Assembly: GCA_943704425.1 (NCBI GenBank)
Contig: CALSCP010000437.1
Coordinates: 1 to 43,560 of the forward strand
Length of the DNA stretch: 43,560 bases
Origin: Ministeria vibrans ATCC 50519
Lineage: Eukaryota; Protista; Filasterea
Reading direction: 5' to 3'
Each line of letters begins with the position of its first letter. Position 1 is the first letter of the stretch. Of the stretch, positions 2,222 to 43,158 are shown in pieces. Made by a program: the position numbers and the translations under genes. The notes under the pieces were generated by a model. It was not told where the DNA came from, ran no database searches, and saw nothing but the letters and a program-made list of their open reading frames with translations.

Positions 2222-5200
2222 TTACTGCAGGGCATTGAGGCACTGACGAGCCCCCTCGTCGGTGGTTGCGGCGCTCGTACTGCGCACCCACACCTCAAGT
2301 CCGCCCGCAAGCAGTTTCCCATGGATGAGCACAACACCGCTACAGACAAACAGAGAGAGAAACAAGGTGACAAAGAAAACAAAGTTATAGAGAGAGAGAC
2401 AAAGTGATAGAGAGAGAAACAAAACGAAAAAAGATAAGCTAGGATTCCACAAGGTATTAAAAAGTCGGTGTCATACCCATCAGAGGACTGACCCGCGACA
2501 ATTCCTTCGGTTCCAATGACTTGCACTGGATGAAGATTGATACTTGACAGGCGTGCCATGAAATCCTAGAAATAAAACACGAGAGTGTGAGTCCACGAAA
2601 TTTGGCATTGAATACAGGTCTCAATTCTCCAATTATTTTCTTAGTCCACGAAAAAAAAAAATTACCGTGACTTTCTTGACAGACGAGTTGCGAATGATAC
2701 GCTTGGTCTCGTGGCCAAAAGTGGTCCATTTTGCGCCAAACTGGGGCGTGGTAAGAGTGAGGGGGGAGAAGGCAATGGAGGGAGTAGCGGTGAGGAGGGA
2801 GACGGACGGGGACTGAGCGGAGGCGGGGGTGTCGTAGAGAGACATTATGTCGAGGGAGGCGGCGGGAGCAGCGGAGGCAGAGGCAGTGGTCGTAGCCGTG
2901 GAAAGAGACATAAGGTCGTTGAGATCTCCAAGCGCGTTGGTGGAGGAGGGTGGCGGCGCGCTTGAAGTGGTGGGGGAGGGTGCGCTCATGAGGTCGTCGA
3001 GGCCAAGCAGATCGGTGGCTGCTGAGGCAGCTGGAGCGGCAGCGCTGGAAGCAGAAGGAGGAGTGTAGGAGGAGACGGGTTTCGCGGCAGCCGTAGTAGT
3101 GGTTGCGGAAGCCGTGGCAGTCTTGGAGGGTTGACTCGTCACTCCGCCAAAAAGCATGCTTGCTTGCTCCTTTTTGCGCTTCTCGGCCTCGCTGAGTTCG
3201 CGCACGACTGGTGCTGATGCAGTCGCTGTGACACGGGGCTGTGAGGTGGTGCCGGACGAGGGAGTCGATGAGCTGGCACCGACTGAGGCAAGGGCTGAAG
3301 AGAGCGACAGGTTGTCGCCGGGAGTGGACGTCGCGGTCGCGTCTGTGGCACCCGTGTCAAACATGGAAGAGGGCTGTGTGGGCGTGGCAGGTGTCGCTTG
3401 CTTCTCGGCATAGCCTGCCTTGCCCCACTTGCGCTGACCGCTCACGTTCAGACCAGTGGCAGAAGGTGCGGCGGCGGCGGCGGCGGCGGGCGTCGAAACA
3501 CTTCCAGCGCCGGGTGTTGACGCACCACCAGCACTGGGGGCTGGGAGACCATTGAAAAGACCGGTGGCGGCGGCGGCGGATGCCGAAACACCCGAGCCGG
3601 CGGGAGTTGCAGATCCACTGCCGAAGGACGGGTCCGATTGGCGCATAAAACCGCCGCCAGCCGACACGGCGGGCTGTTGCGGTGTGGGGTACTGGCTAAA
3701 GTTGAGTCCCGACGACTGGGCACCACCGGCGGCACCACCGGCGGCAGTGCCTGTGGCGTCCACGCCCGCTTCGGCATTGCGCTCACGCTTCGACTTGTAG
3801 GCTGGTTTACCTGCGCGCAGCTGAGCGGAGACGTAGCTGTCGAGGAAGGAGATCTCGGAATCGGGTTCGAGGTCTTCGCACGACGAGTCGACGGGCAGCA
3901 TGGCGAGCATGACGCCGTTGGGCTCTTGAGTAAGCTGACGGAACTCAAAAGCACGCTGCTGCAGGTCGACGCTACGTGAGTTGCAGTAGCGCGCGACGGC
4001 AGCCGTAATGCTTTGCGGTAGCTGTGTCGTGTTAGCCTGCGCGACCAGCTTCATGACGGCTGTCAAGATCCAGCCCTGAGTCTCATCTTGCGCACCCAGT
4101 TCGAGCAGCGACAAGAGACGCTCGGCCACATTGAGCGGGTGAGTCTCTTGCCCGAGCACATAGGTGTACTCGCCCAACACCCAACACATGGTCTGCACGC
4201 AAATGTCCGGCAAGCGATGCGACGCACGATCGAGCATGTTAAGGTACGCCTGCACAGCATGTACACGCAGACTGCTGTCGGCAGACTCGTCGTCACTACC
4301 TTCGGCAATGAGCCGCATCAGATTGTGCGCAACCTCGGGGCGCACAAGGTCCCCGCCCAGTTCAAAGATGGCATTCATGGTCGTTATGAACCATTCGTTG
4401 TCGGGTGCGTATCGCTCTGCCAGCTGTGTGATGCGTGCCACAAGGTCCGCGCGCAGGTAGGAGTCCACTGTGGATCGCAAGTAGTTGACCTAAAACGAAT
4501 GCACAGGCAATAAGTGACTCATAAAAAATAAAAAAATAAAAAAACAGAAAATAAGAGTACCATTTTCTCGACGATGAACGTGACGTTGATTGGGTTGGTC
4601 ATCTTGTAGAGCAGTTCGAGTGTCTTTCGCTTAAGTGTGTCATCCTGATCGTCCAGACAGTCGACGACAACCATTTGGTGGTCAGCGGCGTACTTTGGAT
4701 CCACCTAATGTAGTTCGAAAGACGTACAATTTGCTTTGAGTGAGAAGGACGATTCTTGATATATTTTTATATTTTTAAGGCCGACCTGCACAATCTGAGT
4801 GAGTGCAGTAATACCCAAATAGCGCAAGTTGTTGTTGCCAGAGGAGAGGAAACGGGCAATGCTCTTCGCAGCGAGTTCGATGCAGCGGGTGTTGGGGTAG
4901 ACGGTGGCAATGGTGCGAACACACTCGTTGATGACAGCATAGCCAGCGTGTGTACCCGACTCGGCGCGACGCAACGTGTCCGCAAGCACATCGTACATTC
5001 CCCTAAAAATGAAATCTGATAAGTATATAGAAAAAGAGAAAAAAAGGGAAAAAAAAGAGAGAAAGAGAGAACAAATAGAGAGAGAAAGAAAGAACAAATG
5101 GAGAGAGAGAGCAAGAAACAAAGTGATAGAGAGAGAGAGAGAGGAAGGAAAGTATATTTCCCATCCTGTCGAATGGATTGCCAGAGAACAATGATAATGA

Positions 5201-6551
5201 CTTACGCTGATGTCTTCTGGTCATCAAGCCCTAGGTTGGCAAGAACCTTGAGACACTTGATCTGGATCCAGGGCGCAGGTACCCCGTGGTACTCATACTC
5301 GCGCGACAATCGGTGTTCAATCACCTATTAGAGTAAATAAATAACAATTATTAGTAGTAGTATTGGGAGAGACGCTTGTGAGAGAAGCACAACAAAATAG
5401 GGGGGTTTGTACCTGTTTGAGAATGTTGGTAAAGGCCGATGTGAGGTCCTTGTACTTGGCCGCATTGTCTTTGGCCGTCAGTGACACGTAGACAGTCAAT
5501 GCCGCACTCATGACAGACGGATCGGGGTCGCACAGTGCCTATCACAAAAAAGAAAGAGAGACAGACAGACAGTGAGACAGAGAGACAGTGAGACAGAGAA
5601 AGGAGAGAGAGAGAAACAATGTGTAGAAAGAAAGTGATAGAAAGAAAGTGATAGAAACAATGTGTAGAAACAATGTGTAGAAACAAAGTGATAGAAACAG
5701 TGTAGAAACAAAGTCATAGAAACAAAGTCATAGAAACAAAGAGATAGAAACAGTGTAGAAACAATGCGTAGAAACAAAGTCATAGAAACAATGTGTAGAA
5801 ACAAGGTAATAGAAACAATGTGATAGAAACAAAGTAATACAAACAAAGTGATGGATACCAATGAGACATGACACAAAGACTGAAAGATCAAATTTCTGCA
5901 TGTTCTACTGTACCTTTCGGAAAAGAGGATTGTAGTTTGTGATTGAGAGGGGGTCCAGTTCAACAAACTTGAACAGCGCCATGACAGCCTAGAAAAAAAC
6001 AAAAAAAAAACGAAAAAAGGGTATAATATAAGAAAGGAACAAACCTCTCAAAAATGTACCTTCTTTCTGACGAGTGGCTTAGAATGGGCGAGTTTCTCCT
6101 CGACAAGGGAGGCGACGGCGGGCATCATTTCGGCGTTGATGAGCTTGCAGGTGACAGTGAGGGCGGCGCACACGGCGAGCATGTTGGACGACTTGATGTC
6201 GCGCTGGAGCGTATTGATCAGCAGCATCAGAAAGTTGTGTTCGGGCGTGAGGAAGAGCGACGACGCAAGATACCCCATCCGCTTCTCGGTGATGTTGGTC
6301 GACTACGCGCGGAGGCGGGAGGCGGTTAGAAGGCCGAGGAGAGGCACAGACGAACGGGAAAAAAACCCCAGAAAGAAAAAAAAAAATGGTGTTTTGTACC
6401 TGAGACATTTTGATGGCGTGAATGTAGCCAAAGCTGGCGTCGACGCCAAGCATCTCGCAGTAGATGAGCCGCACAAGGTACTCCTTCATCTGCTTCGGGG
6501 AAATGTCCGCCTCTTTGAGCTTTTCCTGTGGAACAGAAGAGAAGAGAGGAG

Positions 6552-6584
<33 letters not shown>

Positions 6585-6873
6585 AGGAGAGAGAGAGAGG
6601 TTTATGAAAATAATACAAAATCCAAAAACATACTTGTAAGATACGACCCTCTGCCGCAATGATGCGGTCCTCTTCATGCTTGGTTTTGGCCTCGCCAATG
6701 AGACTAGAGAACGGCGGCGCAAGAGAAGACAGAGACAGAGAGAAAGAGAGAGAGAGTATGAGAGAGAGAGAGAGTGTTGTGACAGAATTGAAAGAGAGAG
6801 AAAGCTACCGAATCAATTCTAAGAATTGTTTGCTTGCGTTTGGCACGGTCGTTCCCGTCACCAGTGAGGCCAT
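2222..6873 (-). CDS. AP4E1: AP-4 complex subunit epsilon (multi-exon)
   Basis: Spliced exons give FLELIR..GEAKTKHEEDRII, MKEYLVRLIYCEMLGVDASFGYIHAIK, KRMGYLASSLFL, YEYHGVPAPWIQIK, HQMVVVDCLDDQDDTLKRKTLELLYKMTN, LAERYAPDNEWFI, VAHNLMRLIAEG. These are followed by a Ser/Ala/Pro hinge and a short epsilon-type C-terminal ear (PLTLTTPQFGAKW...VLIHGKL). Confidence 0.93.
5545..5880. repeat. Intronic minisatellite of ~14-bp units (ATAGAAACAAAGTG / GTAGAAACAATGTG variants)
   Basis: Direct tandem degenerate repeats visible inside an AP4E1 intron. Confidence 0.85.
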
Positions 6874-9380: not shown

Positions 9381-10639
9381 TTACGCGAATTGCTTTGGGT
9401 TGATCTTGCGGGTTCGTTGGAGAAGACCCGCGTGTTCTTCACGAATGACTTTGCAGACATTGCGAAGGGCCTCATGAGCCTACACACAGTGAAAAGAGAC
9501 AATAGAGAGACGAGTAAGTGGGAATAGAAAAAAGACTCTGATCGAGTGAGAGAGAGTGGACTTGCAAGAGTCACAAAATGAGTGAGTGAGTAAGACTAGG
9601 CGAGACACTGATTTGTGTGTGAGAGGGTCAGACTGATTGAGTCGGTCAATGAGTGAATTCAGTAGGTGAGTGAGGGTGTGAGAAACACTGATTGATGTGA
9701 AAGACATCGCCACATCGAGATTTGTTCGTTCGTACCTTTAGTGCATTTTTTCTAAATCGGTTAATGCCAAAGTCTTCAAGACGCGATCGCCATCCCCAGA
9801 CGGAAGACGTCACCCGAGCATCAATATGACACACAGTCCTAACCAAACAATCAGTGGCAGAACATTCCATTGTTTCTGTGCATACTCTGTCTCAGACTGT
9901 TCGTAGACACAGCGCTCTTCCACCACCATAAAGCTGCGCAGGGTGATGTTACGCGTGAAGGTACGCATGGTTTGCTTCTCAGGGTCGACAACACTGTCCT
10001 CCACAATGAACGAGCGGGTGTTGCGAACAAGCTGCGGCACAAAAAGAGACATCGACTGCACTGAGGTGGTGTGTGTGTGTGTGCTGACCACTTGACTTCG
10101 CCCGTACCATTTCACCCCAAGCCGGCTTTCCATTGGTCTTCACAAGTAATCTTCTGGTATGCAAAAAGCCGGTCTCCGGGTCCACATAACGATCAATCAC
10201 GTCTGCGTTCAACTGTAAGAGCGGAAGAGAGAGAGAGAAAGTGGCGGTTGAGGCGGTGTGAGCACACGACACGAAAAATGTCAAATCCCAGCAGTGTTTG
10301 CATAATGGCGCATGCGTTGCTGTCGGACGGGTCCCTTGATCAGACTATGGGGATGGCCGGGAGCAACGTGGGGGCGGACAAAAGAGCGGTACGCAAAACA
10401 TTTGGAGGAAAGTCACAGAAAAAAAAAACTCCCCATCCAAAACCACGCGGAAAGAGAGGAGCACCAGCGAGCCGGGCACGTTACACAGATAAGCAACACT
10501 CGGGTGGTCACAGCCAGTGGCAAGGGTGTCTTACAACGTGGCGCGTTAAAGGTGAGTCAAGTCCGTATTTTCTCCAGAAAGCGAGTGTGACGACGGCAAA
10601 CGAGTCGGGAAACGACATGTGTTGTGTTAGAAGACGCAT
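9381..10639 (-). CDS. PRELI/Ups/SLMO-family mitochondrial lipid-transfer protein (PRELID3-like; multi-exon)
   Basis: MRLLTQHMSFPDSFAVVTLAFWRKY..., DVIDRYVDPETGFLHTRRLL, IVEDSVVDPEKQTMRTFTRNITLRSFMVVEERCVY, LEDFGINRFRKNALK match the PRELI domain. An in-frame upstream extension through an exon at ~10770-10860 is possible. Confidence 0.88.
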
Positions 10640-11007
10640 GTTGAGATTCTATATGTATAAAGTGAGGCAGGCAAACAATAATAATTTACAATATGTTATA
10701 ACTCATCTTGTCCAAGTCACACAAGCGCGAACATTTTCATTTGTGATCTTCTGAAAAAACGAACTCACCGGGTGATCGGCCGCGATGTAGACCTGGAAAA
10801 TGGCGTAGACATGTTGAACTGTTGATATATCATGAAGCGGTAGATACCCAGACGATCGAATAAAGGCTGGATATTTCAAAAAAAAAAAACAGAAAATTCC
10901 ATGACTCCACTCTTCATTTTGCTACGCCTTTCCACTGTTGAAAGAATGTCATGGTTATATCAGAGTAAATGACAAGAGACGTGCGGTAATAAAATCGAAA
11001 ATGATGT

Positions 11008-11013
11008 TATATA
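11008..11013 (+). promoter_or_regulatory. TATA-like element upstream of the permuted tRNA
   Basis: TATATA ~37 nt upstream of the 3'-half start. Upstream TATA-like elements are described for permuted tRNA genes, where the internal A/B boxes are in reversed order. Confidence 0.4.
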
Positions 11014-11049
11014 CCACTTTAGCGATAAAATTCGGCACTTTGAGTTGAA

Positions 11050-11181
11050 ACCGTGCGGTCCAGATGGAAATCGCAATAGTAGGAAAAATCGCTTTTTTCC
11101 AGGATTTGGTTCGAGCCCCTGGCGAGGCAAGTTCTCTTGTTCTCGCCTCGCTAGCTCAGTTGGTAGAGCACACGGCTTTTA
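11050..11181 (+). tRNA. Circularly permuted, intron-containing tRNA-Lys(TTT): 5' half 11145-11181; 3' half 11050-11063 + 11108-11129; intron 11064-11107; spacer 11130-11144
   Basis: Reassembled sequence GCCTCGC TA GCTC AGTTGGTA GAGC A CACGG CT TTT A|A CCGTG CGGTC CAG|GG TTCGAGC CCCTG GCGAGGC A. It has a 7/7 bp acceptor stem, 4/4 D stem, 5/5 anticodon stem and 5/5 T stem, with invariant T8, GG in the D loop and TTCGA. Confidence 0.9.
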
Positions 11182-11185
11182 AGTC

Positions 11186-11197
11186 TTTTTTTTTTTT
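11186..11197 (+). terminator. Pol III-type poly(T) terminator
   Basis: T12 run 4 nt after the end of the tRNA 5' half. Confidence 0.65.
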
Positions 11198-11357
11198 GGT
11201 CGTGACTCTTTCTTAATTAATTATTATTATTAATAATTATTATTATAATAATAATTATTTTATTTTTTTATTTTTTTTATTATTATTTATTTTCGCTTTT
11301 CGTTTGTGATTGATAATAAATTGAAAATGTCTTCTTCTTCTATTATTTTTACATAAT

Positions 11358-14444: not shown

Positions 14445-15844
14445 TTATTCGACTTTGCTATCAATTTCTTTGCGCGCTCGCCACGCAGACAAAATCGCCC
14501 ATACAGACAAGGGGCGCATGTACGACAGTGATCGATATGTGTGATTGATGCCCACCGCCTCGGGAAGCCTACAAGAATAAAACAGAGGTAAACGTAGCCT
14601 TTGTGTGTTGTGCTCCGCTGCGTACTGGAAGGCATAACCAGCACGATTGTAGAGGTAGTCCACAAGACCATGGGCAGTCTCAAACCCTTCGGCAAGCATC
14701 CCATTCTGAATCATAGTGGCAGCTACAGCAAACGTTGTGCCGAGCCACACTTCCTCCGACTGCATACTTGCACGATCGACTCCGCCTAAAACCACTCCAT
14801 ATCAGCACACTAGCCACACACTAAGCACACACACACACACTAAGCACACCAAAAAGACACATACATACACAGACGCAAGCACGCACACTAAGTACATACA
14901 CGAAGCACACATATACACTAAACACACACACACACACTAAGCACACACACATTAAGCACATACACACAATAAGCACACATACACACACTAAGCACACACA
15001 CACTAAGTACACACACACATGCATGTTGTTATACCACCATTGGGGCGCATTCCATTGACTGCGCCCATGCGACCGCCCGCATAGCGCTTCACATTGTTCT
15101 CATACACGGTTCGCAGTGCACTAGCAATGTCCCGCTCACTCACCACCGGCTCAAGACCACTCTGTTGCAAATACCAACTTCCAGCACACTGATCCGCCAT
15201 GATCGAATTGCTATAATTAAAAATATGGCATAAAGTAAGTGGGTTTGCAACTTCAAACACGAAGACGAAAAAAAAGGACCTGTGAGTGCTCTTTGAGCTG
15301 TCATAGTCAAAGTAAGCGCCATTGAACAGTTTCTCGGTGTACGCTCGTTTCCCACGCGCCAGCCACTGCTCAAAGACCGCCTTGGCCTCAGTGGCGCGCA
15401 CGCGCAACGCATCCGACGCAATGCGTACACACGCCGGGTCGGACACACTGATTGCGTCGGATGCACAAATGGCCGATTGCAGAGCAGCCAACCACAGTCC
15501 ACCACTGTACGCACTGCACCCCCGCACACTCCATGCGTCATACGTCTGTATGTATGTATGTGTATGTCAGTGGCGCAAACAAAAATATTGAAAAGGGGTT
15601 CAGGAGAAGAGAGTGAGTGGGAAAGCACAAAGTGGCAGTGAGTAAGCATGCAAAGAGTTGAGAGTTGAGTGAATCAGACAACCTACAAAACGCCAAATAC
15701 CCCCACTCACCTGATCAGCACTTCCTCGGTTGTCAATCACTCCATCTCCATCTAACAACACGCAATAAGAAGGTTGTCTCACTCTACCACTTTCTTTCGT
15801 TCTCTATCGCATTGTTTCCTTTCTCCACCCTTTCTCTCACTCAC

Positions 15845-15935
<91 letters not shown>

Positions 15936-16364
15936 GTATGTACCTTCGTCAAATGTAAACATATACTCAATTGCGCGTAAAAGTGACGGAAACACAGTCA
16001 CCAGAAACTCAGAATCGCCAGTGATCTTATAGTCTCGATAGACCTAAGTGAAAAATTTGGGGGATATTGAGATGACACTGGATTGATGTTTTGAGCTGGC
16101 ATTTTTTTCGAACCTGTAGCACAAACTTTGAGTTGAGGTCCTTCCACTCACTCGTGTTGTGAATGTTGTAACTATTGACGCGCTCAAAGGGAGCACCACT
16201 TGGCTCACCAATGTCGTGTGGGATGGCACCTGCACCAAGTGAGAGAGAAAATGGGGGAAAGGAGCAGGGTTGAGGATAGGATTACACTTGACAATAGGAA
16301 ACGAGTGAACCAAATTGTCCAACTTGTCAGATTATTTGTGTGGAAAAAAAATAATAATAATAAC

Positions 16365-16436
<72 letters not shown>

Positions 16437-16464
16437 TAATTTTGCGTTGCTATTGTNNNNNNNN

Positions 16465-16561
<97 letters not shown>

Positions 16562-18580
16562 TAATTTTGCGTTGCTATTGTTTTTACCGGGCACTTTGCG
16601 GGTACCACTCCTTCCGTCCATCACAAACTGCCTCTGATCGCGATCCTCAATGCCCAGCGCACGTCCCATCTCGCGCTGAATCTCCAGCTCAATGCGCGGC
16701 CAATTGGTCAGGAGTGCGACAGATGCGTAAAAATGCACATCATACGTATTGTACATGCGATACTCGTGTCCCTCCAAATACCCAAAGTACCCCATATCTT
16801 CCCCTTCCGGCCCCTCCTTGCGCGCCGTCTTCTTCTCCGCCGTGTGGTCTAGCCACAGTGTCCCGCCATCCGCCACAAAGTAAAGTCCGTTGAATAGTGC
16901 TCCCTTGAGCCATCCAGGCAACTCTGGCTCCTCCAAAATCACCCGCTGCCACGCAAAGATGCGCTCTTCCCACTCCACGGCCCTTTCCAACGCATACTCT
17001 GCAGCTTCTGCTGCACTCGACACGTACCGCGCATAACGACGTGTGTACTCCCGCTCGGAGTCGTTGAAGCGCACCTCAGGCGCATACCAGCTCAGTGCAA
17101 ATCGCCCCACTTCAAGGCGCTCACCACCACTGCCTTGCGAAAGCCCAGTGCGTGTGACAGAGAGTGCCGCACTCATTGCCTCCCCTACACGCGACGTCAT
17201 TGTCGTCGTTGCACTCTCGCTGTGCTGCTGCTGCATTGGCGAGGGTGCCACGCTGCCTGTGTCGCGTAGTGTGCGCCAGACTGCGCGTGCACTTGAGCCA
17301 TCGCCCCCCTCCGACACAAACCCCACACAACGCCCCACAGTCTCTCCCTCAGCCGCAATCGCAAAGTCAACGGGATACGCTCCATCACGATGCTCCAGAA
17401 CAACGGTATGCTCGCCACTCGCACGGTTCACGTGTCCTCCATGCACGTCTGCGTTCTCGCCCGTCCCATTCTGCCAACTGAAACACACCGACACAGCCAG
17501 TGTGCTACCGTCCCGTGTCCCTTGCTCGTCCGACACCACTGTCACCTCCCACACAAAGACCGCGCACGGAAGACTGCTGTCACGGTAGTCGTCGGCAATC
17601 ACAGGTGACACCTTGGCGAAAGGAAGAAGAGCAAAAATGAGAAAAATTGAGAAACAATAATAATGCAATAATTTAGTATTAATATAATAATAACTATAGT
17701 TAATAATGTTAATTTGGTGCACCTGACGACAGACGAGTCGCAAAAGAATGCCACACTCATCGATGGTGTACGTGGTCCAGGAACGTGGATAGAGGGCATG
17801 GTAGGTGGTGTTGGCCGGCGAGTGGGTCGTGCGTTCGGGATCCCAGTGGGTCGGGCGACCGCTCAGTATCTTCTGCACAAGGTGGAACCTGGAACAAAAA
17901 CGGCACAATATTGCGTCAATGTGCACACTGCCTTGGTCGCACAGCGTACCGTTCGCCTGTTGTAGGGTGGATGCGTGCAACGGAGACCACAAAGGCGTCG
18001 GCCTTCACTTCGGTGCTCTGGTACACGCCAGGCTGAGACACCTGCCAACGGTCAAAGGCGCCCGTCAGTCCTCGGCCGATTGTGCCCGCCCCAATGCCAC
18101 CCAGCGGCACGCCGCCGCGCGATGGCGACAGCGGTAGCTGATGGAATGGATCCATGTAGGGAACGCGGTTCATGGCGCGCGACTGACGCACTTGCTTGTA
18201 CATTCTGTCAAAAGGAGATATTATATAAAAATAGGAGTTAAAGTCAAAATGTGGGGTAATACGGTCGATTCGACCGCACGATGCAAGAATATACACAGCA
18301 TCACACTATGCTCAGTCAAACAGGAGCAACTGATGCAAGGAAAAGAGCAAGGGAAAGCGGGAAGGGCGCAAAAACAAAGAATTGTCATGCTGTACCGCCA
18401 TGCGAGCGGCAAAAAGCCAATAGCCTGGCGGAATCGAGGAGTGAAGGGGCGCGGCTGGCATTCAAAGGAGGCGGCGGTCGAGGAGCGGAAGTAGCAGTTG
18501 TCTTGCGACGGAATTGCAGTGGAAGCTGAAGAGGATGCTGATGGAGGCGCTGCTGCGGCTGTCGCGTCTTCTGAACTCAT
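14445..18580 (-). CDS. GBA2: Non-lysosomal glucosylceramidase (GH116; multi-exon)
   Basis: [127 protein letters not shown]. Confidence 0.95.
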
Positions 18581-18807: not shown

Positions 18808-21751
<2,944 letters not shown>

Positions 21752-32765: not shown

Positions 32766-33743
32766 ATGGCCTCTCGACTGTCATCGCTTTCCCTGAGCGA
32801 GTCCGACGAGGAGCATCGGCCACTGTCGACTGCCGTTGGCACTCCCCGAGCATACCGGGCACCTCCGGCCTTCTCGGAGCCCAGCACGGACGACGACGAT
32901 GCCGAGGAGGAGTACAGCGACGCCGATGCGGCCGACATGCCCGACGACGGCCGTGGTCGTCGCTTGAACTTTGACGCATTTGAATCGCCGTCGCAACCCG
33001 CACGTCTGCTGATCTCGCGCGCATCGTCGCATGCGCCCTCGCCGGCACGCTCCCCTGTCACACACCGCGTTCCCGAGCTCATTCCAAGCTGGCTCAGCCC
33101 CGCACGACGACCGCAAGCGCCAAAGCGGATGCCGCAGTCTTTCAAACACTCACCAATGCCGACCAACAGTTCCCTCTCGGCAACATACAGCAAGCCTGCG
33201 CCGGACCCTGCCTCGTCGCTGGGTGCCCCCCGATCCCAAACCTATTCTCATGCGTATCTAGTGGACCAATCCGCCAGAGACAGTCCCTTGCGGCGTCCCG
33301 ACGAGCGACTGTTGCGTTCGCTTCGTGACGAGATTGCCTCGCTGCACGACGAGCGCTTGCATGCCCAAGACCAATGGCTTGCGCGTCTCCACCGTTTAGA
33401 ATCTTCAGTAGAAGCTCTGGAGCGCGCATCCCAGAGGGACAAGCAACGACCGCACGACACTACTATCGACCGTCAACGAGCGCCCTCCTTTGCCACTCCG
33501 CACCGCGCCCACCGTCTCCCCCACCACCACCACCACCATCGTCAGCCCGACGTATCCACAGTCGATCCAACCAATTTAGAGTCTCTTCGTCGCACCAATG
33601 ACCTCCTTCTCTCCCAGCTCGAGCAACAGACAGAGCGTCTCCAGTCGACTGTTCTCTCCTCTTCCTTTACACCCTATTCTCCCGTACGCATCCACCAACA
33701 TATCGAAAGAAAACAGAAAATGCCTTGCGGAATAAGATTGTAA
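32766..33743 (+). CDS. Hypothetical Ser/Pro-rich protein with C-terminal coiled coil
   Basis: 325-aa GC-rich ORF with acidic N-terminus and heptad-like LRSLRDEIASLHDERLHAQDQWLARLHRLESSVEALE. No family recognised, and the 3' end is uncertain. Confidence 0.6.
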   Translation: MASRLSSLSLSESDEEHRPLSTAVGTPRAYRAPPAFSEPSTDDDDAEEEYSDADAADMPDDGRGRRLNFDAFESPSQPARLLISRASSHAPSPARSPVTHRVPELIPSWLSPARRPQAPKRMPQSFKHSPMPTNSSLSATYSKPAPDPASSLGAPRSQTYSHAYLVDQSARDSPLRRPDERLLRSLRDEIASLHDERLHAQDQWLARLHRLESSVEALERASQRDKQRPHDTTIDRQRAPSFATPHRAHRLPHHHHHHRQPDVSTVDPTNLESLRRTNDLLLSQLEQQTERLQSTVLSSSFTPYSPVRIHQHIERKQKMPCGIRL

Positions 33744-36924: not shown

Positions 36925-37597
36925 AAATAGTAATTAATAGAAGAAGAAGAATACAACCCATTTATTATAGTAATTAATAGAAGAAGAAGAATACAACCCA
37001 TTTATTAATGATACAGTCACCACGCGAAGACACAGCCAGACCGCCTTGCAAACTCGACCGAAACTCTAGAGGTAACATGGGAGAACAGTGGCAGGTCATA
37101 GTGCTGTGTCGACGCTATCCAGTGAGGCAATCGCAATGGTACGCCATACCCCCAGAGGAGGCTTAGGGCTCTGACACCATGAAGGTGTCTGTCGGCAAGG
37201 AGTGTAAAGTCGAAGTCGTGGTTGAGGCAATCGGATCGGTGGTCGGCGGCGGCAAGTCCAGGTGGCTGCGGGGCGCTCCCGTGGTACACAGGCGGGGCGG
37301 GTCGGCTGTAGGGCGGCTGGTGTGCTTCGTGACTGTGTGTTAGATTATGAGGATAGAGNNNNNNNNNNNNNNNNNNNNNNNNNNNNNNNNNNNNNNNNNN
37401 NNNNNNNNNNNNNNNNNNNNNNNNNNNNNNNNNNNNNNNNNNNNNNNNNNNNNNNNNNNNNNNNNNNNNNNNNNNNNNNNNNNNNNNNNNNNNNNNNNNN
37501 NNNNNNNNNNNNNNNNNNNNNNNNNNNNNNNNNNNNNNNNNNNNNNNNNNNNNNNNNNNNNNNNNNNNNNNNNNNNNNNNNNNNNNNNNNNNNGCAG

Positions 37598-37628
<31 letters not shown>

Positions 37629-38060
37629 GGCTGTCGGATGGCTGCGCACGCCCGACACCGGAACGTGTCGACCGACGCGCCGGCGGGGATGTTGAAGCGC
37701 GCAAAGGCTGGGCCCGCCATGCCCCAGCTGATGCAGGTGGTGCCCGTGATGAGTGCGTTGCAGCGCAGCAGTAGCAGCACTTGCCCCGATCTCTTCGGCA
37801 TCTTGCTCAGGTACTTGGATGTGCTCAGTGGGTTGTACCTCCTGTCTTTGAGTGGCGACGCGCTCGTAGGTCCGCTGAGGCTGGGCGTGTCTTGGAGACG
37901 CGCTCGCCACTCGTTTGTGGACAGACTCTCCGCTGCCTTCACGAGCTCGCCGTCCTTGACACGGTCGTAGCACAGGACCCGTCTTGCTGGCGCCCCCGCC
38001 GGCATTGGGTGCAGCGTCTCGAGCGTGTTGAGGATTGACAGCGGTCGTCTGATGGAAAGA
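36925..38060 (-). mobile_element. Longest copy of the non-LTR retrotransposon (copy 3): ORF2-like C-terminal fragment, N-gap, 3' region, AATAAA and ~40-bp tandem-repeat tail
   Basis: Minus-strand ORF ...EWRARLQ...YNPLSTSKYL...LLLLRCNAL...CRAC resembles the post-RT C-terminal region of LINE ORF2. The 3' ~330 bp is shared with 41015-41337. The tail unit TAATAAATGGGTTGTATTCTTCTTCTTCTATTAATTACTA occurs twice. The 5' boundary is uncertain. Confidence 0.7.
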
Positions 38061-38137
38061 CACTCATTGCACACTCTGAAGAGGGAAGTCAGACTGAATG
38101 GCCCACTCATGAGCTCAACATTCCGTAAGAGCAAATT

Positions 38138-41613: not shown

Positions 41614-43158
41614 TCATGTTGGGCTAAGAACATGCCGCATTACCTGCAGCGTTACCGTAAGCGCGGTGCCATTAACCCACTGGATTCCGTAGAGCACTGT
41701 GCTCTCGTTCAGGGCAACCACCGTCTGTCCCATGTTGTACATAGTATGCGGAAATAGCCCGTCATACGCGGGCGTACCAAGGTATACACGGTCTGCCTGT
41801 GCAAAGGCAGCATGTCCACTCGAGGGGTTGTAGTCAATGAAGGTCGGCACAAAGGTAAAAAGGTGTGAGCCGATGACTGTCGCGTTCGAAATGGTCTCCA
41901 TGCTGAACAGTCGCACTGTGTCCCCTTCGTGCTCCGCCCGTTTCAGCACCGGCTGTAACACCGGCTCAAACGCATTCTGGCCCATGTCGTTGCACGCTGG
42001 TCTCAGCGGAGACCAAAAGAGCGGTTCCTCTCCAATGACAAGCGATTGTGCCTCAACATCGGCACGTATCAGCACCCACGCAGCCATCGCAACAAAGCCA
42101 GGGTAGCAGTGGAGCATTTGGACGGTTGAGTTGGTGCACCACACGCGCACTCGTGCAAGCGCATGGGTCTGGTTGACGACGGCAATTCCCGGCCGTTGAT
42201 CCGGCGTGATATCGCGAGTCCCCGGTCCCTTCATGAATGGGGGGAAGGACCGGCTTGCCAGGATAGAAATGTTCAAATCCACTCTCAGTTGTGCCAGGGC
42301 AAGGGCAGTTGGTCCATCCTGGCATTGAGCGGACACAAGCAGTGTCATGTTGGCAGCATCCGCCACCTCAACGATAGGCATGGGTGTGTAGTCAAAGACG
42401 TCACAAGCCTGGCAGTAGCTATCACGCAGTGCCTGTGGCGCGCCCGCCACCACGCCACCGTCCCCATTGACACGGAATGCCTGCAGAGTTGAGGCATAGT
42501 TGAAAACATGGGAGTCAAACCCCATCACGAACATGTCATCGCGCACATATTTGACGCAGAAGTAGATGCTCATCGGGGCAAACGCAGCATTGAAAATGTT
42601 GGTCGTTTGCATGAGAACAGGCGCCGTGATGAAGTCGCCAAGGACGAATTTGAAGGTGTGCACGTTCACAAGTGGGTTGTTGTAGTTCGAGTTGTCAGGC
42701 AGCACCACCACAACAAGGCCTCCCTCGCCCACAGCGACCGCCTGTGTGTGATCGAACGCCATATCGGCCCAACTATAAAAAAAAAAGTACACACACAAGA
42801 GAGAAATCAGCATTTCGGTTCTAACCAAGCATACAAGCAAGGGTTCGACGTACTCGCATGAGGATGGTCCTACACCGGCAGCGTTGCCAAGTATCACCGT
42901 ACCATTGTCCGCAACGTAAATGCTTTGAAGGCTCATACTCTCTGAGTACTGACCACCCTCGACGATGCCAACGACACGATTCGGCTCCAGCAACTGCGCG
43001 GCAAACCCAAAGAACTGCCCTTGCACCCAATCACTCGAAGTAGTCTCAACCCAGCCGTTGGTGAAGGCGAAGTTGGTGGTGTTTGTGTTGACATTGAGCG
43101 AATAAGCGAGCGAAAGACTGACGAGGGCCACAAGAAAGACGCAGAAGGGCTTTAACAT
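41614..43158 (-). CDS. Hypothetical secreted beta-rich glycoprotein (one probable in-frame intron at ~42775-42835)
   Basis: Signal peptide MLKPFCVFLVALVSLSLA, several N-x-S/T sequons, scattered Cys, no TM segment. No family recognised. Confidence 0.65.
   Translation of the reverse strand: MLKPFCVFLVALVSLSLAYSLNVNTNTTNFAFTNGWVETTSSDWVQGQFFGFAAQLLEPNRVVGIVEGGQYSESMSLQSIYVADNGTVILGNAAGVGPSSCEYVEPLLVCLVRTEMLISLLCVYFFFYSWADMAFDHTQAVAVGEGGLVVVVLPDNSNYNNPLVNVHTFKFVLGDFITAPVLMQTTNIFNAAFAPMSIYFCVKYVRDDMFVMGFDSHVFNYASTLQAFRVNGDGGVVAGAPQALRDSYCQACDVFDYTPMPIVEVADAANMTLLVSAQCQDGPTALALAQLRVDLNISILASRSFPPFMKGPGTRDITPDQRPGIAVVNQTHALARVRVWCTNSTVQMLHCYPGFVAMAAWVLIRADVEAQSLVIGEEPLFWSPLRPACNDMGQNAFEPVLQPVLKRAEHEGDTVRLFSMETISNATVIGSHLFTFVPTFIDYNPSSGHAAFAQADRVYLGTPAYDGLFPHTMYNMGQTVVALNESTVLYGIQWVNGTALTVTLQVMRHVLSPT

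What the first reader, a model, noticed from the sequence alone, without database searches (positions are those of the whole stretch)
11058..11108. Non-canonical BHB-like intron in the T-stem (position 51/52) of the same tRNA
Seen: a 44-nt insert (11064-11107) splits the T-stem strand CAG|GG. It folds as an archaeal-style motif: central 4-bp helix GTCC(11058-61)/GGAT(11102-05), 3-nt bulge AG^A, intron helix TGGAAA(11065-70)/TTTCCA(11096-101), and a second 3-nt segment TT^G. Cutting after the second nucleotide of each bulge restores exactly CAGGG, which pairs 5/5 with CCCTG. The outer exon helix is weak, so the motif is relaxed. Established: most eukaryotic tRNA introns sit at 37/38, and ectopic BHB introns are typical of archaea and C. 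merolae. Inference: this organism has a splicing endonuclease with broadened, structure-based specificity, so one tRNA is assembled from three segments.
Basis: partly seen in the sequence, partly recalled or inferred. Interest (0 to 1): 0.85.

Follow-up and report, generated by a model that had tools for sequence, protein, structure and literature searches.

The report
T-stem intron in permuted tRNA-Lys
A lysine tRNA gene of an unidentified eukaryote is written back-to-front and is also interrupted in its T-stem by a 44-base insert that folds into the bulge-helix motif cut by tRNA-splicing enzymes; this is a rare kind of scrambled tRNA gene, but one already described in a few algae and archaea.

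Summary
Window 11051-11182 (+) is a circularly permuted tRNA-Lys(UUU) gene. The 3' half (positions 38/39-73) lies upstream, a 15-nt linker follows, then the 5' half (1-37/38). A TATA-like box lies upstream and a T12 terminator downstream. A 44-nt insert (11064-11107) splits the T-stem between positions 51 and 52. Re-ordering the halves and deleting the insert gives a perfect 73-nt cloverleaf (21/21 stem pairs). The outer helix is essentially absent, so this is a relaxed HBh' motif. Its exact register occurs in only 3.5-6 x 10^-5 of shuffled inserts. Its energy is 1.6 kcal/mol above the best fold. A BHB-type ectopic intron is the best reading, but splicing is unproven, the insert contains a T6 run, and an unusual endonuclease is not strictly required. 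The same combination (permuted gene plus ectopic intron) is published for Cyanidioschyzon merolae and Ostreococcus. Marine metagenome contigs carry permuted tRNA-Lys(UUU) genes without this insert. The source organism has no close sequenced relatives. Verdict: new member of a known kind, of moderate interest.

The parts
11007..11013 (+). TATA-like element TTATATA, about 40 nt upstream of the 3' half; likely upstream Pol III promoter
   Evidence: Read directly from the sequence. TATA-like boxes within 50 bp upstream are the described promoter of permuted and disrupted tRNA genes in C. merolae (PMC3978253; PMC3728597). AT-rich boxes lie at a similar distance in the marine permuted Lys genes. The function here is inferred.
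11036..11049 (+). Leader, removed at the 37/38 junction; the transcription start is not known and the 5' coordinate is approximate
   Evidence: UUGAAA 11045-50 pairs with anticodon-loop U33-A38. Alternatively, G11047 pairs with C32 (an anticodon-intron pair at -3), which leaves the bulge A11048 A11049 | A11050.
11050..11063 (+). Exon segment a: tRNA positions 38-51 (A38, anticodon stem 3' strand CCGTG, variable loop CGGTC, T-stem CAG)
   Evidence: The junction at A37/A38 is ambiguous by up to 1-2 nt, because both the leader and the 5' half carry the As.
11064..11107 (+). 44-nt insert, the putative BHB (HBh') intron at position 51/52
   Evidence: It is single-copy in the window and absent from all fetched loci. 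It contains a T6 run at 11093-98.
11058..11061 (+). Central helix H, exon strand GUCC (pairs with 11102-11105 GGAU)
   Evidence: four standard pairs, one of them G-U.
11062..11064 (+). 3-nt bulge AG|A holding the 5' splice site
11065..11070 (+). Intron helix h', 5' strand UGGAAA (pairs with 11096-11101 UUUCCA)
   Evidence: six Watson-Crick pairs.
11096..11105 (+). h' 3' strand UUUCCA (11096-101) followed by H intron strand GGAU (11102-05)
11106..11108 (+). 3-nt segment UU|G holding the 3' splice site; not closed by a stable outer helix
11108..11129 (+). Exon segment b: positions 52-73 (GG, T-loop TTCGAGC, CCCTG, acceptor 3' strand GCGAGGC, discriminator A73)
   Evidence: This holds the only exact B-box match in the window.
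11130..11144 (+). [quoted passage not shown]
   Evidence: Processing is inferred by analogy with PMC3978253.
11145..11181 (+). Exon segment c: positions 1-37 (acceptor 5' strand GCCTCGC, D-arm, anticodon stem 5' strand CACGG, CTTTTA)
11182..11197 (+). Trailer AGTC plus T12 run (11186-97), the likely Pol III terminator
   Evidence: All marine permuted Lys genes likewise end in AAG + 1-5 nt + T6-T9.

Best explanation
This is a nuclear, circularly permuted tRNA-Lys(UUU) gene with its junction at 37/38 (type II). It carries one extra, ectopic protein-spliced intron of 44 nt between T-stem positions 51 and 52. Proposed pathway (all steps inferred): Pol III starts downstream of the TATA-like box and ends in the T12 run. 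The transcript is leader, 38-51, intron, 52-73, 15-nt linker, 1-37, trailer. The tRNA-splicing endonuclease recognises the local HBh' motif (4-bp H, 3-nt bulge, 6-bp h') and cuts after G51 and before G52. The ligase joins the ends and the T-arm can then form. This probably happens first, because the body of the tRNA cannot fold without the T-arm. The leader and trailer are then cut at the canonical 37/38 site and the ends are ligated into a circle. That site does not form a good BHB, so it is probably read by the ordinary eukaryal distance-measuring mode together with the C32-G(-3) pair. RNase P and tRNase Z remove the linker from the circle, and CCA is added.
For: After re-ordering and deleting 11064-11107, ARAGORN finds a perfect tRNA-Lys(ttt). 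It has 7+4+5+5 stem pairs and carries U8, A14, G18G19, G15:C48, U33, A37, G53, T54T55C56 and A58. A control in which only the insert is deleted, keeping genomic order, is recognised as Lys(ttt) with its 'intron' at 38. The BHB pairs are verified. The exact register is reached in 3.5e-5 of mononucleotide and 6e-5 of dinucleotide shuffles. The conformer lies 1.6 kcal/mol above the body-constrained best fold. The isolated motif scores -6.9 kcal/mol, within the -11.1 to +1.15 range reported for processed C. merolae motifs. A TATA-like box upstream and a T12 run directly after the 5' half match the described architecture. Real permuted type II tRNA-Lys(UUU) genes exist in marine eukaryote contigs, with compensatory changes in the acceptor and T stems between two groups. 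The pathway has experimental precedent in C. merolae tRNA-Gly(CCC), which is type II plus a T-loop intron; its intron is removed before the linker.
Against: No RNA evidence is available. The insert contains a T6 run (11093-98), which could end Pol III transcription early. T4-T5 runs do occur inside the linkers of the marine permuted genes, but their terminators can be as short as T6. The BHB conformer is a minority of the predicted ensemble, about 0.1, and competes with an internal hairpin. The outer helix h is missing. None of the 33 related permuted Lys loci has an insert at this position, so there is no covariation support. Only 43.5 kb of the genome is visible, so an intact second tRNA-Lys(UUU) gene elsewhere cannot be excluded. 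Insertions in T arms of eukaryotic tRNA genes are often pseudogene marks (PMC4090602).
Confidence: 0.68

Rival explanations
1. This is a dead or decaying gene. A once-functional permuted tRNA-Lys gene was hit by a 44-bp insertion in the T-stem, and the BHB-like fold is fortuitous or a relic. The mature tRNA-Lys(UUU) comes from another locus.
For: The insert holds a T6 run. The BHB is not the predicted dominant fold and lacks the outer helix. No homologue shares the insert. T-arm insertions in eukaryotic tRNA genes are usually regarded as pseudogene marks.
Against: All 21 stem pairs and all conserved tertiary nucleotides are intact, as are the promoter-like box and the terminator. A random insert gives this motif in this register with probability of about 5e-5. 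Small genomes with permuted tRNAs tend to have one gene per anticodon: 43 genes in C. merolae and 33 in Bathycoccus.
Confidence: 0.2
2. The insert is removed, but not through the proposed HBh' geometry. In the alternative conformer H is kept and extended by G11057-U11106, while the intron folds into two small hairpins. The 5' site then sits in a multiloop, or another nuclease pathway is involved.
For: The 'body + H' conformer is 1.2 kcal/mol more stable than the full H+h' conformer (-48.8 against -47.6). C. merolae processes motifs without H or h.
Against: The six-pair h' placed exactly one nucleotide after the cut site is what makes the motif statistically exceptional. Both conformers predict the same cut sites, so this is a refinement rather than a different outcome.
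Confidence: 0.08
3. It is not a tRNA gene at all: tRNA-like fragments lie next to each other by chance, or it is a tRNA-derived repeat.
For: ARAGORN and Rfam report nothing in the native sequence.
Against: Those tools cannot see permuted or T-stem-interrupted genes. They also miss the marine permuted genes. The re-ordered sequence is a perfect cloverleaf, 74% identical to the marine tRNA-Lys sequences. The locus is single-copy in the window.
Confidence: 0.02

Closest known systems
Cyanidioschyzon merolae tRNA-Gly(CCC) a/b (Soma et al. 2013, PMC3728597; Soma 2014, PMC3978253 Table 1)
   Same: It is a type II (37/38) permuted gene that also carries an ectopic intron in the T-arm of the upstream 3' half. 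It has a short linker (7 nt there, 15 nt here), an upstream TATA-like box and a downstream T-stretch. A circular intermediate was shown, and the intron is removed before the linker.
   Different: Their intron is 13 nt, sits in the T-loop at 55/56, and is a 'no h' motif. Here the intron is 44 nt, sits in the T-stem at 51/52, and is HBh'. The isoacceptor and the organism also differ. C. merolae's own Lys(TTT) gene is type IV (59/60), has a 38-nt linker and has no intron.
Other C. merolae T-arm disruptions: the single T-stem intron among 42 introns, and tRNA-iMet permuted at 50/51
   Same: They show that a eukaryotic splicing system handles BHB-type sites inside the T-stem, one base pair away from the site seen here.
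   Different: The identity and position of the single C. merolae T-stem intron could not be read, because the figures and supplements are not held. The iMet case is a permutation junction, not an intron.
Ostreococcus lucimarinus permuted tRNA-Ser(TGA), with a 56-nt intron at 27/28 (Maruyama 2010, via PMC3978253 Table 1)
   Same: It is a type II permuted gene with one extra non-canonical intron of similar length, in a nuclear genome.
   Different: The intron is in the anticodon stem and is a 'no H' motif. The host is a green alga, whereas the window's AP-4 epsilon falls outside crown Viridiplantae in a quick tree.
Permuted tRNA-Lys(UUU) genes on marine metagenome contigs, found here (group A e.g. 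L005:119-263(-); group B e.g. L004:8176-8352(+))
   Same: Same isoacceptor, same 37/38 junction, same order of parts, a trailer beginning with G followed by a T-run, and a similar acceptor 5' strand (GCCTCGT or GCCTCCA against GCCTCGC). The mature sequences are 73-74% identical to the window's.
   Different: None has a T-stem insert. Linkers are 13-48 nt. They carry a U4.C69 mismatch. There is no synteny with the window. Their organisms are unnamed in the databases; GC content near 45-47% and high abundance would fit Bathycoccus-like picoalgae, but that is a guess.
Archaeal non-canonical tRNA introns with hBH or HBh' motifs (Thermoproteales and others; Marck and Grosjean 2003, Sugahara 2008, as reviewed in PMC4090602)
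   Same: The local motif logic is the same: a 4-bp H, a 3-nt bulge cut after its second nucleotide, a flanking helix, any position in the cloverleaf, and often several disruptions in one gene.
   Different: Those are cut by archaeal (alpha-beta)2 or epsilon2 EndA enzymes. Here the host is a eukaryote, with eukaryote-only neighbouring genes (AP-4, Integrator-like, GBA2).
Chondrus crispus T-loop (58/59) and D-loop introns, and Guillardia theta nucleomorph T-arm introns
   Same: These are experimentally verified ectopic tRNA introns in eukaryotic genomes.
   Different: They sit at fixed loop positions, or are very short (3-24 nt). C. crispus has no permuted genes.

Membership tests
BHB-type (protein-spliced) tRNA intron, relaxed HBh' class | Removing the insert restores a canonical cloverleaf, with unambiguous boundaries | tested here: met
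   perfect T-stem CAGGG/CCCTG and a full 73-nt tRNA-Lys. The boundaries cannot slide.
BHB-type (protein-spliced) tRNA intron, relaxed HBh' class | A central 4-bp helix H formed between 5' exon nucleotides and the 3' part of the intron | tested here: met
   11058-61 pair with 11102-05, giving 4/4 standard pairs (one G-U).
BHB-type (protein-spliced) tRNA intron, relaxed HBh' class | A 3-nt bulge next to H with the splice site after its second nucleotide, closed by a helix h' of at least 2 bp | tested here: met
   bulge A G | A, h' of 6 Watson-Crick pairs. This register is reached in 3.5e-5 to 6e-5 of shuffles.
Strict hBHBh' motif | A second 3-nt bulge on the opposite strand, closed by an outer exon helix h of at least 2 bp | tested here: not met
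   U U | G is present, but G11057 is unpaired opposite it. Once the anticodon stem forms, only C11056-G11109 remains. This is not a strict BHB.
BHB-type (protein-spliced) tRNA intron, relaxed HBh' class | The motif is thermodynamically accessible in the precursor | tested here: inconclusive
   the motif lies 1.6 kcal/mol above the constrained best fold, its pair probability is about 0.1, and a hairpin competes with it.
BHB-type (protein-spliced) tRNA intron, relaxed HBh' class | [quoted passage not shown] | not testable with these tools
   No transcriptome or enzyme data exist for this organism.
Circularly permuted tRNA gene, type II | [quoted passage not shown] | tested here: met
   15-nt linker at 11130-44, with acceptor pairing 7/7.
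Circularly permuted tRNA gene, type II | The junction of the halves lies at 37/38 in the anticodon loop | tested here: met
   The 5' half ends in CTTTTA(A) and the 3' half starts with (A)CCGTG. The junction is ambiguous within the A run.
Circularly permuted tRNA gene, type II | The leader and trailer form a BHB motif around the junction | tested here: not met
   The best fold is a continuous leader:anticodon-loop duplex (-13.6 kcal/mol). H would have only 2 of 4 pairs. A C32-G(-3) pair with a 3-nt bulge is possible but weak (-3.9). Marine group B does form a near-canonical BHB, whereas group A does not.
Circularly permuted tRNA gene, type II | An upstream TATA-like box and a downstream T-stretch, with no terminator between the segments | tested here: inconclusive
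   TTATATA at 11007-13 and T12 at 11186-97 are present, but a T6 run lies inside the intron at 11093-98.
Circularly permuted tRNA gene, type II | Maturation through a circular RNA intermediate | not testable with these tools
   This needs circular RT-PCR or RNase R sequencing.

The most novel reading that the evidence does not exclude
The host may be a eukaryote outside the red and green algae. No protein hit exceeds about 49% identity, and its AP-4 epsilon falls outside crown Viridiplantae. If so, this locus would be the first sign that permuted tRNA genes and ectopic BHB introns, and hence a position-independent BHB-reading mode of the Sen complex in vivo, exist in a further major eukaryotic lineage. 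Related permuted tRNA-Lys genes lack the insert, so this would also be a lineage-specific gain of an ectopic intron inside an already permuted gene. That would give a natural test case for how such introns arise.
Probability: 0.3. Interest if true: 0.72.

Novelty: new member of a known kind. Interest (0 to 1): 0.5.

Why it matters
Standard finders (ARAGORN, Rfam) cannot detect permuted tRNA genes or introns outside the anticodon loop, so genomes that use them look as if they lack essential tRNAs. Each new case widens the known distribution of position-independent tRNA splicing in eukaryotes. So far that distribution covers C. merolae, Chondrus, a few green picoalgae, Auxenochlorella and nucleomorphs. 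Each case also bears on whether these architectures are archaeal-like relics or repeated inventions. An intron inside the T-stem blocks T-arm folding. It therefore imposes an order on maturation: splicing must come before RNase P and tRNase Z cleavage and before pseudouridine-55 formation (compare cmPus4, PMC9602550). If this is the only gene with anticodon UUU in the genome, decoding of AAA codons depends on two splicing-type reactions and a circular intermediate.

Tried and rejected
1. ARAGORN and Rfam on the native window, both at gathering thresholds and at E up to 10 around the locus, returned no tRNA. These tools cannot see this architecture, so the blank is uninformative.

2. An exact scan of metagenome contigs for the T-arm/acceptor/linker/acceptor/D-arm arrangement found 0 hits. 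Of these, 33 are permuted Lys genes and none has a T-stem insert.

3. Synteny between the window and those loci: none.

4. Identifying the organism failed. Exact protein look-ups found nothing. Homology searches gave at most 35-49% identity. An AP-4 epsilon quick tree only shows the window outside crown Viridiplantae. The naming search for the marine group A organism returned no names.

5. The window is not from C. merolae: its Lys(TTT) gene is type IV and has no intron.

6. A canonical BHB at the leader/trailer junction was rejected.

7. Alternative splice boundaries were rejected. So was a pseudo-T-stem using the intronic CCAGG (11099-103) with CCTGG (11118-22): it would give a 14-nt loop, which is not a T-loop.

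8. The insert is not a repeat or mobile element: it is single-copy in the window and absent from the loci.

9. Other tRNA or permuted tRNA genes in the window: none. There is one exact B-box, and a duplicated-tile ARAGORN scan hits only this locus.

10. Viral contig scans found nothing related to the insert.

11. Supplements of Soma 2013 and Michely 2013 are not held. I therefore could not check the position of the C. merolae T-stem intron or the list of permuted Bathycoccus tRNAs.

12. It was not sent to Rfam or any database tool, because those accept references only. That step was left out.

Full report
**What is in the sequence**

Read on the + strand, the region shows the parts of a tRNA in the wrong order. 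The T-arm and 3' acceptor strand (GG TTCGAGC CCCTG GCGAGGC A, 11108-11129) come first. A 15-nt spacer follows (11130-44). Then comes a complete 5' half: GCCTCGC TA GCTC AGTTGGTA GAGC A CACGG CTTTTAA (11145-11182).

The 3' strand of the anticodon stem (CCGTG, 11051-55), the variable loop (CGGTC) and the first three T-stem bases (CAG, 11061-63) lie further upstream. They are separated from GG 11108-09 by the 44-nt insert that the finding describes.

ARAGORN and Rfam find no tRNA in the window. I then joined the pieces in a local script as 11145-11182 + 11051-11063 + 11108-11129. ARAGORN calls the result a 73-nt tRNA-Lys(UUU) with every stem perfectly paired. The usual invariant and tertiary nucleotides are also present. 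With only the insert deleted and the genomic order kept, the duplicated sequence is recognised as Lys(ttt) with an 'intron' at position 38.

The locus is therefore a circularly permuted tRNA gene with its junction at 37/38 (type II in the nomenclature of PMC3978253). The finding concerns an additional interruption at position 51/52. The joined sequence was not sent to any database tool, because those take references only. That step was left out.

**Checking the observation**

- Helix H is G11058-U11105, U59-A104, C60-G103 and C61-G102.
- Helix h' is six Watson-Crick pairs, 11065-70 with 11096-101.
- The bulge A11062 G11063 | A11064 lies between H and h'.
- U11106 U11107 | G11108 follows H on the other strand.

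Cutting after the second nucleotide of each 3-nt element joins CAG to GG exactly. The boundaries cannot slide, because the flanking bases differ.

On the exon side there is no real outer helix. G11057 is unpaired, and once the anticodon stem is formed only C11056-G11109 remains. In the usual classification this is a relaxed HBh' motif, not a strict hBHBh' (PMC3728597 Fig. 2 legend; PMC4090602).

The motif is far from a chance feature. With the exons fixed, 7 of 200,000 mononucleotide shuffles and 3 of 50,000 dinucleotide shuffles of the insert give H 4/4 plus h' of at least 6 bp in the required register.

Energetically it is accessible but not dominant. With the acceptor, D and anticodon stems forced, the BHB conformer is -47.6 kcal/mol against -49.2 for the best fold. 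Its pairs have about 0.1 probability. The competitor is a hairpin between GGAAAAA (11082-88) and UUUUUCC (11094-11100), which uses the same U-rich strand. The isolated H+h' motif scores -6.9 kcal/mol. That is inside the -11.1 to +1.15 range reported for C. merolae motifs that are processed in vivo.

**Surroundings**

- A TATA-like TTATATA sits at 11007-13, about 40 nt before the 3' half.
- A T12 run starts four bases after the 5' half.
- This is the arrangement described for permuted and otherwise disrupted tRNA genes in C. merolae, where TFIIIC-independent transcription from an upstream TATA box is proposed.
- The locus lies in a 1.9-kb gap between protein-coding ORFs.
- It is single-copy in the window, and its insert matches nothing else in the window or in any fetched locus.
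- It is the only B-box and the only permuted tRNA detectable in the 43.5 kb.

One feature argues against easy expression. The insert contains a T6 run (11093-98), which may act as a Pol III terminator in some organisms.

**The permutation junction**

I expected a BHB between leader and trailer, as reported for C. merolae. It is not there.

The best cofold is a nearly continuous duplex (-13.6 kcal/mol). Leader UUGAAA (11045-50) pairs with anticodon-loop U33-A38, C32 is bulged out, and a G.G mismatch is followed by two more pairs. In the canonical register H would have only its two end pairs, C32-G11047 and U35-G11044.

That register does contain the eukaryotic anticodon-intron pair: position 32 pairs with the nucleotide at -3 from the 3' site, and a 3-nt bulge A A | A38 results. 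It is weak, at -3.9 kcal/mol.

My inference is that the junction, which sits at the canonical 37/38 position, is read by the ordinary eukaryal distance-measuring mode on a folded tRNA body (PMC4090602). Only the T-stem insert depends on local BHB recognition. The T-stem intron would then have to go first, because the body cannot fold while the T-stem is split. This agrees with the C. merolae tRNA-Gly(CCC) result that the T-loop intron is removed before the linker is processed. It also agrees with the finding that the pseudouridine-55 synthase does not act on T-arm-interrupted precursors.

**Relatives**

An exact-pattern scan for the permuted arrangement found nothing in metagenome contigs. A looser scan, for a Lys(UUU) 5' half followed within 8 nt by a T-run, returned 57 loci.

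Thirty-three of these are permuted type II tRNA-Lys(UUU) genes on marine eukaryotic contigs. They fall into two sequence groups, A and B. Their re-ordered sequences are called tRNA-Lys by ARAGORN. They are 89% identical to each other and 73-74% identical to the window's tRNA.

Between the groups, pairs 6:67, 7:66 and 49:65 change on both sides. These are therefore genes under selection for the cloverleaf.

They share several features with the window gene:
- the order of parts;
- the 37/38 junction;
- a trailer that begins with G and runs into a T-stretch;
- a very similar acceptor 5' strand.

None has anything inserted in the T-stem, and there is no synteny with the window. So the permuted tRNA-Lys(UUU) architecture is real and recurrent in nature. 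The 44-nt insert is specific to the window's lineage, and no comparative (covariation) support for its fold can be obtained.

**The organism**

Neighbouring genes are eukaryotic and contain spliceosomal introns. They include AP-4 epsilon, an Integrator-4-like HEAT protein, GBA2/GH116, malic enzyme, a queuosine-salvage protein, and EGF and PAN domain proteins.

None of the window's ORFs is in the 15-billion-protein collection. The best homologues reach only 35-49% identity and come from mixed lineages: Mesostigma, haptophyte, oomycetes, animals and plants.

In a quick AP-4 epsilon tree, crown Viridiplantae form a clade with 100% SH-aLRT support that excludes the window. The window branches alone between that clade and the rest. 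This is a single gene and an unfinished search, so it is weak evidence.

The window is not C. merolae. That alga's Lys(TTT) gene is permuted at 59/60, has a 38-nt linker and has no intron. I could not place the organism further. It is not human.

**Comparison with what is known**

The combination of a permuted gene and an extra ectopic intron is published for four C. merolae genes and for Ostreococcus lucimarinus tRNA-Ser(TGA). C. merolae has one T-stem intron among its 42, and a permutation junction at 50/51. Ectopic introns are also verified in Chondrus crispus and in the Guillardia nucleomorph. Permuted genes have since been reported in Bathycoccus, prasinoviruses and Auxenochlorella.

The present case passes the tests for a type II permuted gene and for an HBh' intron. 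It fails the strict hBHBh' test at both sites. I therefore file it as a new member of a known kind. It is an ectopic intron at 51/52, 44 nt long, in a type II permuted tRNA-Lys(UUU), in an organism that is not one of the described ones.

It is untested here. It is also not strictly needed, because yeast and Xenopus enzymes already cut BHB substrates.

**Verdict**

| Item | Assessment |
|---|---|
| Observation | confirmed |
| Interpretation | partly supported |
| Best explanation: functional permuted tRNA-Lys with a BHB-type T-stem intron | about 0.68 |
| Pseudogene reading | about 0.2 |
| Interest | 0.5 |

The interest would be higher if the host proves to lie outside the red and green algae.

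Noticed in passing
window 11036-11055 with 11171-11189: The leader and trailer of the permuted precursor do not form a BHB. The predicted fold is a continuous leader:anticodon-loop duplex (-13.6 kcal/mol) with C32 bulged, so both cut sites would lie inside a helix. How the 37/38 junction is recognised is unexplained; a C32-G11047 anticodon-intron pair is possible but weak.
   Followed up: partly
window 11093-11098: There is a T6 run inside the putative intron, on the strand that also forms h'. It could act as an internal Pol III terminator.
   Followed up: partly
window 11066-11092: The intron contains an imperfect direct repeat, GGAAATCGC (11066-74) and GGAAAAATCGC (11082-92). Either copy can pair with the downstream U-rich strand, giving two alternative helices.
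   Followed up: partly
window 11205-11290: A long tract made only of A and T (ATT/AAT-type low complexity) lies directly downstream of the tRNA terminator.
   Followed up: no
L005:119-263(-), L018:5021-5165(-), L026:4407-4551(-), and about 25 more loci (group A); L004:8176-8352(+), L003:3065-3228(-), L008:921-1102(+), L014, L033, L052 (group B): Abundant marine eukaryotic contigs (GC about 45-47%) carry type II permuted tRNA-Lys(UUU) genes that ARAGORN and Rfam miss. tRNA-Lys is not among the 34 permuted genes tabulated for these algae in the 2014 review. Both groups keep a U4.C69 mismatch and G1.U72 in the acceptor stem, while 6:67, 7:66 and 49:65 covary. Group B termini fold into a near-canonical BHB; group A termini do not.
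   Followed up: partly
L009:3285-4245(+) and L031, L039, L041, L044, L049, L056, L059: This is an array of at least 10 tRNA genes. Its tRNA-Lys(UUU) carries a T-rich insert of about 23 nt (including a T7 run) after the anticodon loop. The origin was not determined; it may be viral or organellar.
   Followed up: no
L010, L017, L020 (= viral contig L064), L034, L040, L043, L045, L050, L055; and L011, L019, L030, L046, L047: These loci have a tRNA-Lys 5' half ending in CTTTTAA followed by a T-run, with no T-arm within 130 nt upstream and no Rfam tRNA hit. At least one is on an IMG/VR viral contig. They could be split genes, genes with long introns, or decoys.
   Followed up: no
window 2633-4480(-), 6079-6618(-), 15003-17992(-), 19074-20998(+): AP-4 epsilon, GBA2/GH116 and malic enzyme are each split over several ORFs, so the genome has spliceosomal introns. 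Several long ORFs have no Pfam match at all (41614-43158, 32766-33743, 37017-38063, 10071-10754).
   Followed up: partly
L001 (JGI 3300035187, contig Ga0335047_0000782): This is a compact, intron-poor eukaryotic metagenome contig. It encodes the best database homologue of the window's 1004-aa Integrator-4-like protein, at only 34% identity. It has no tRNA genes.
   Followed up: partly
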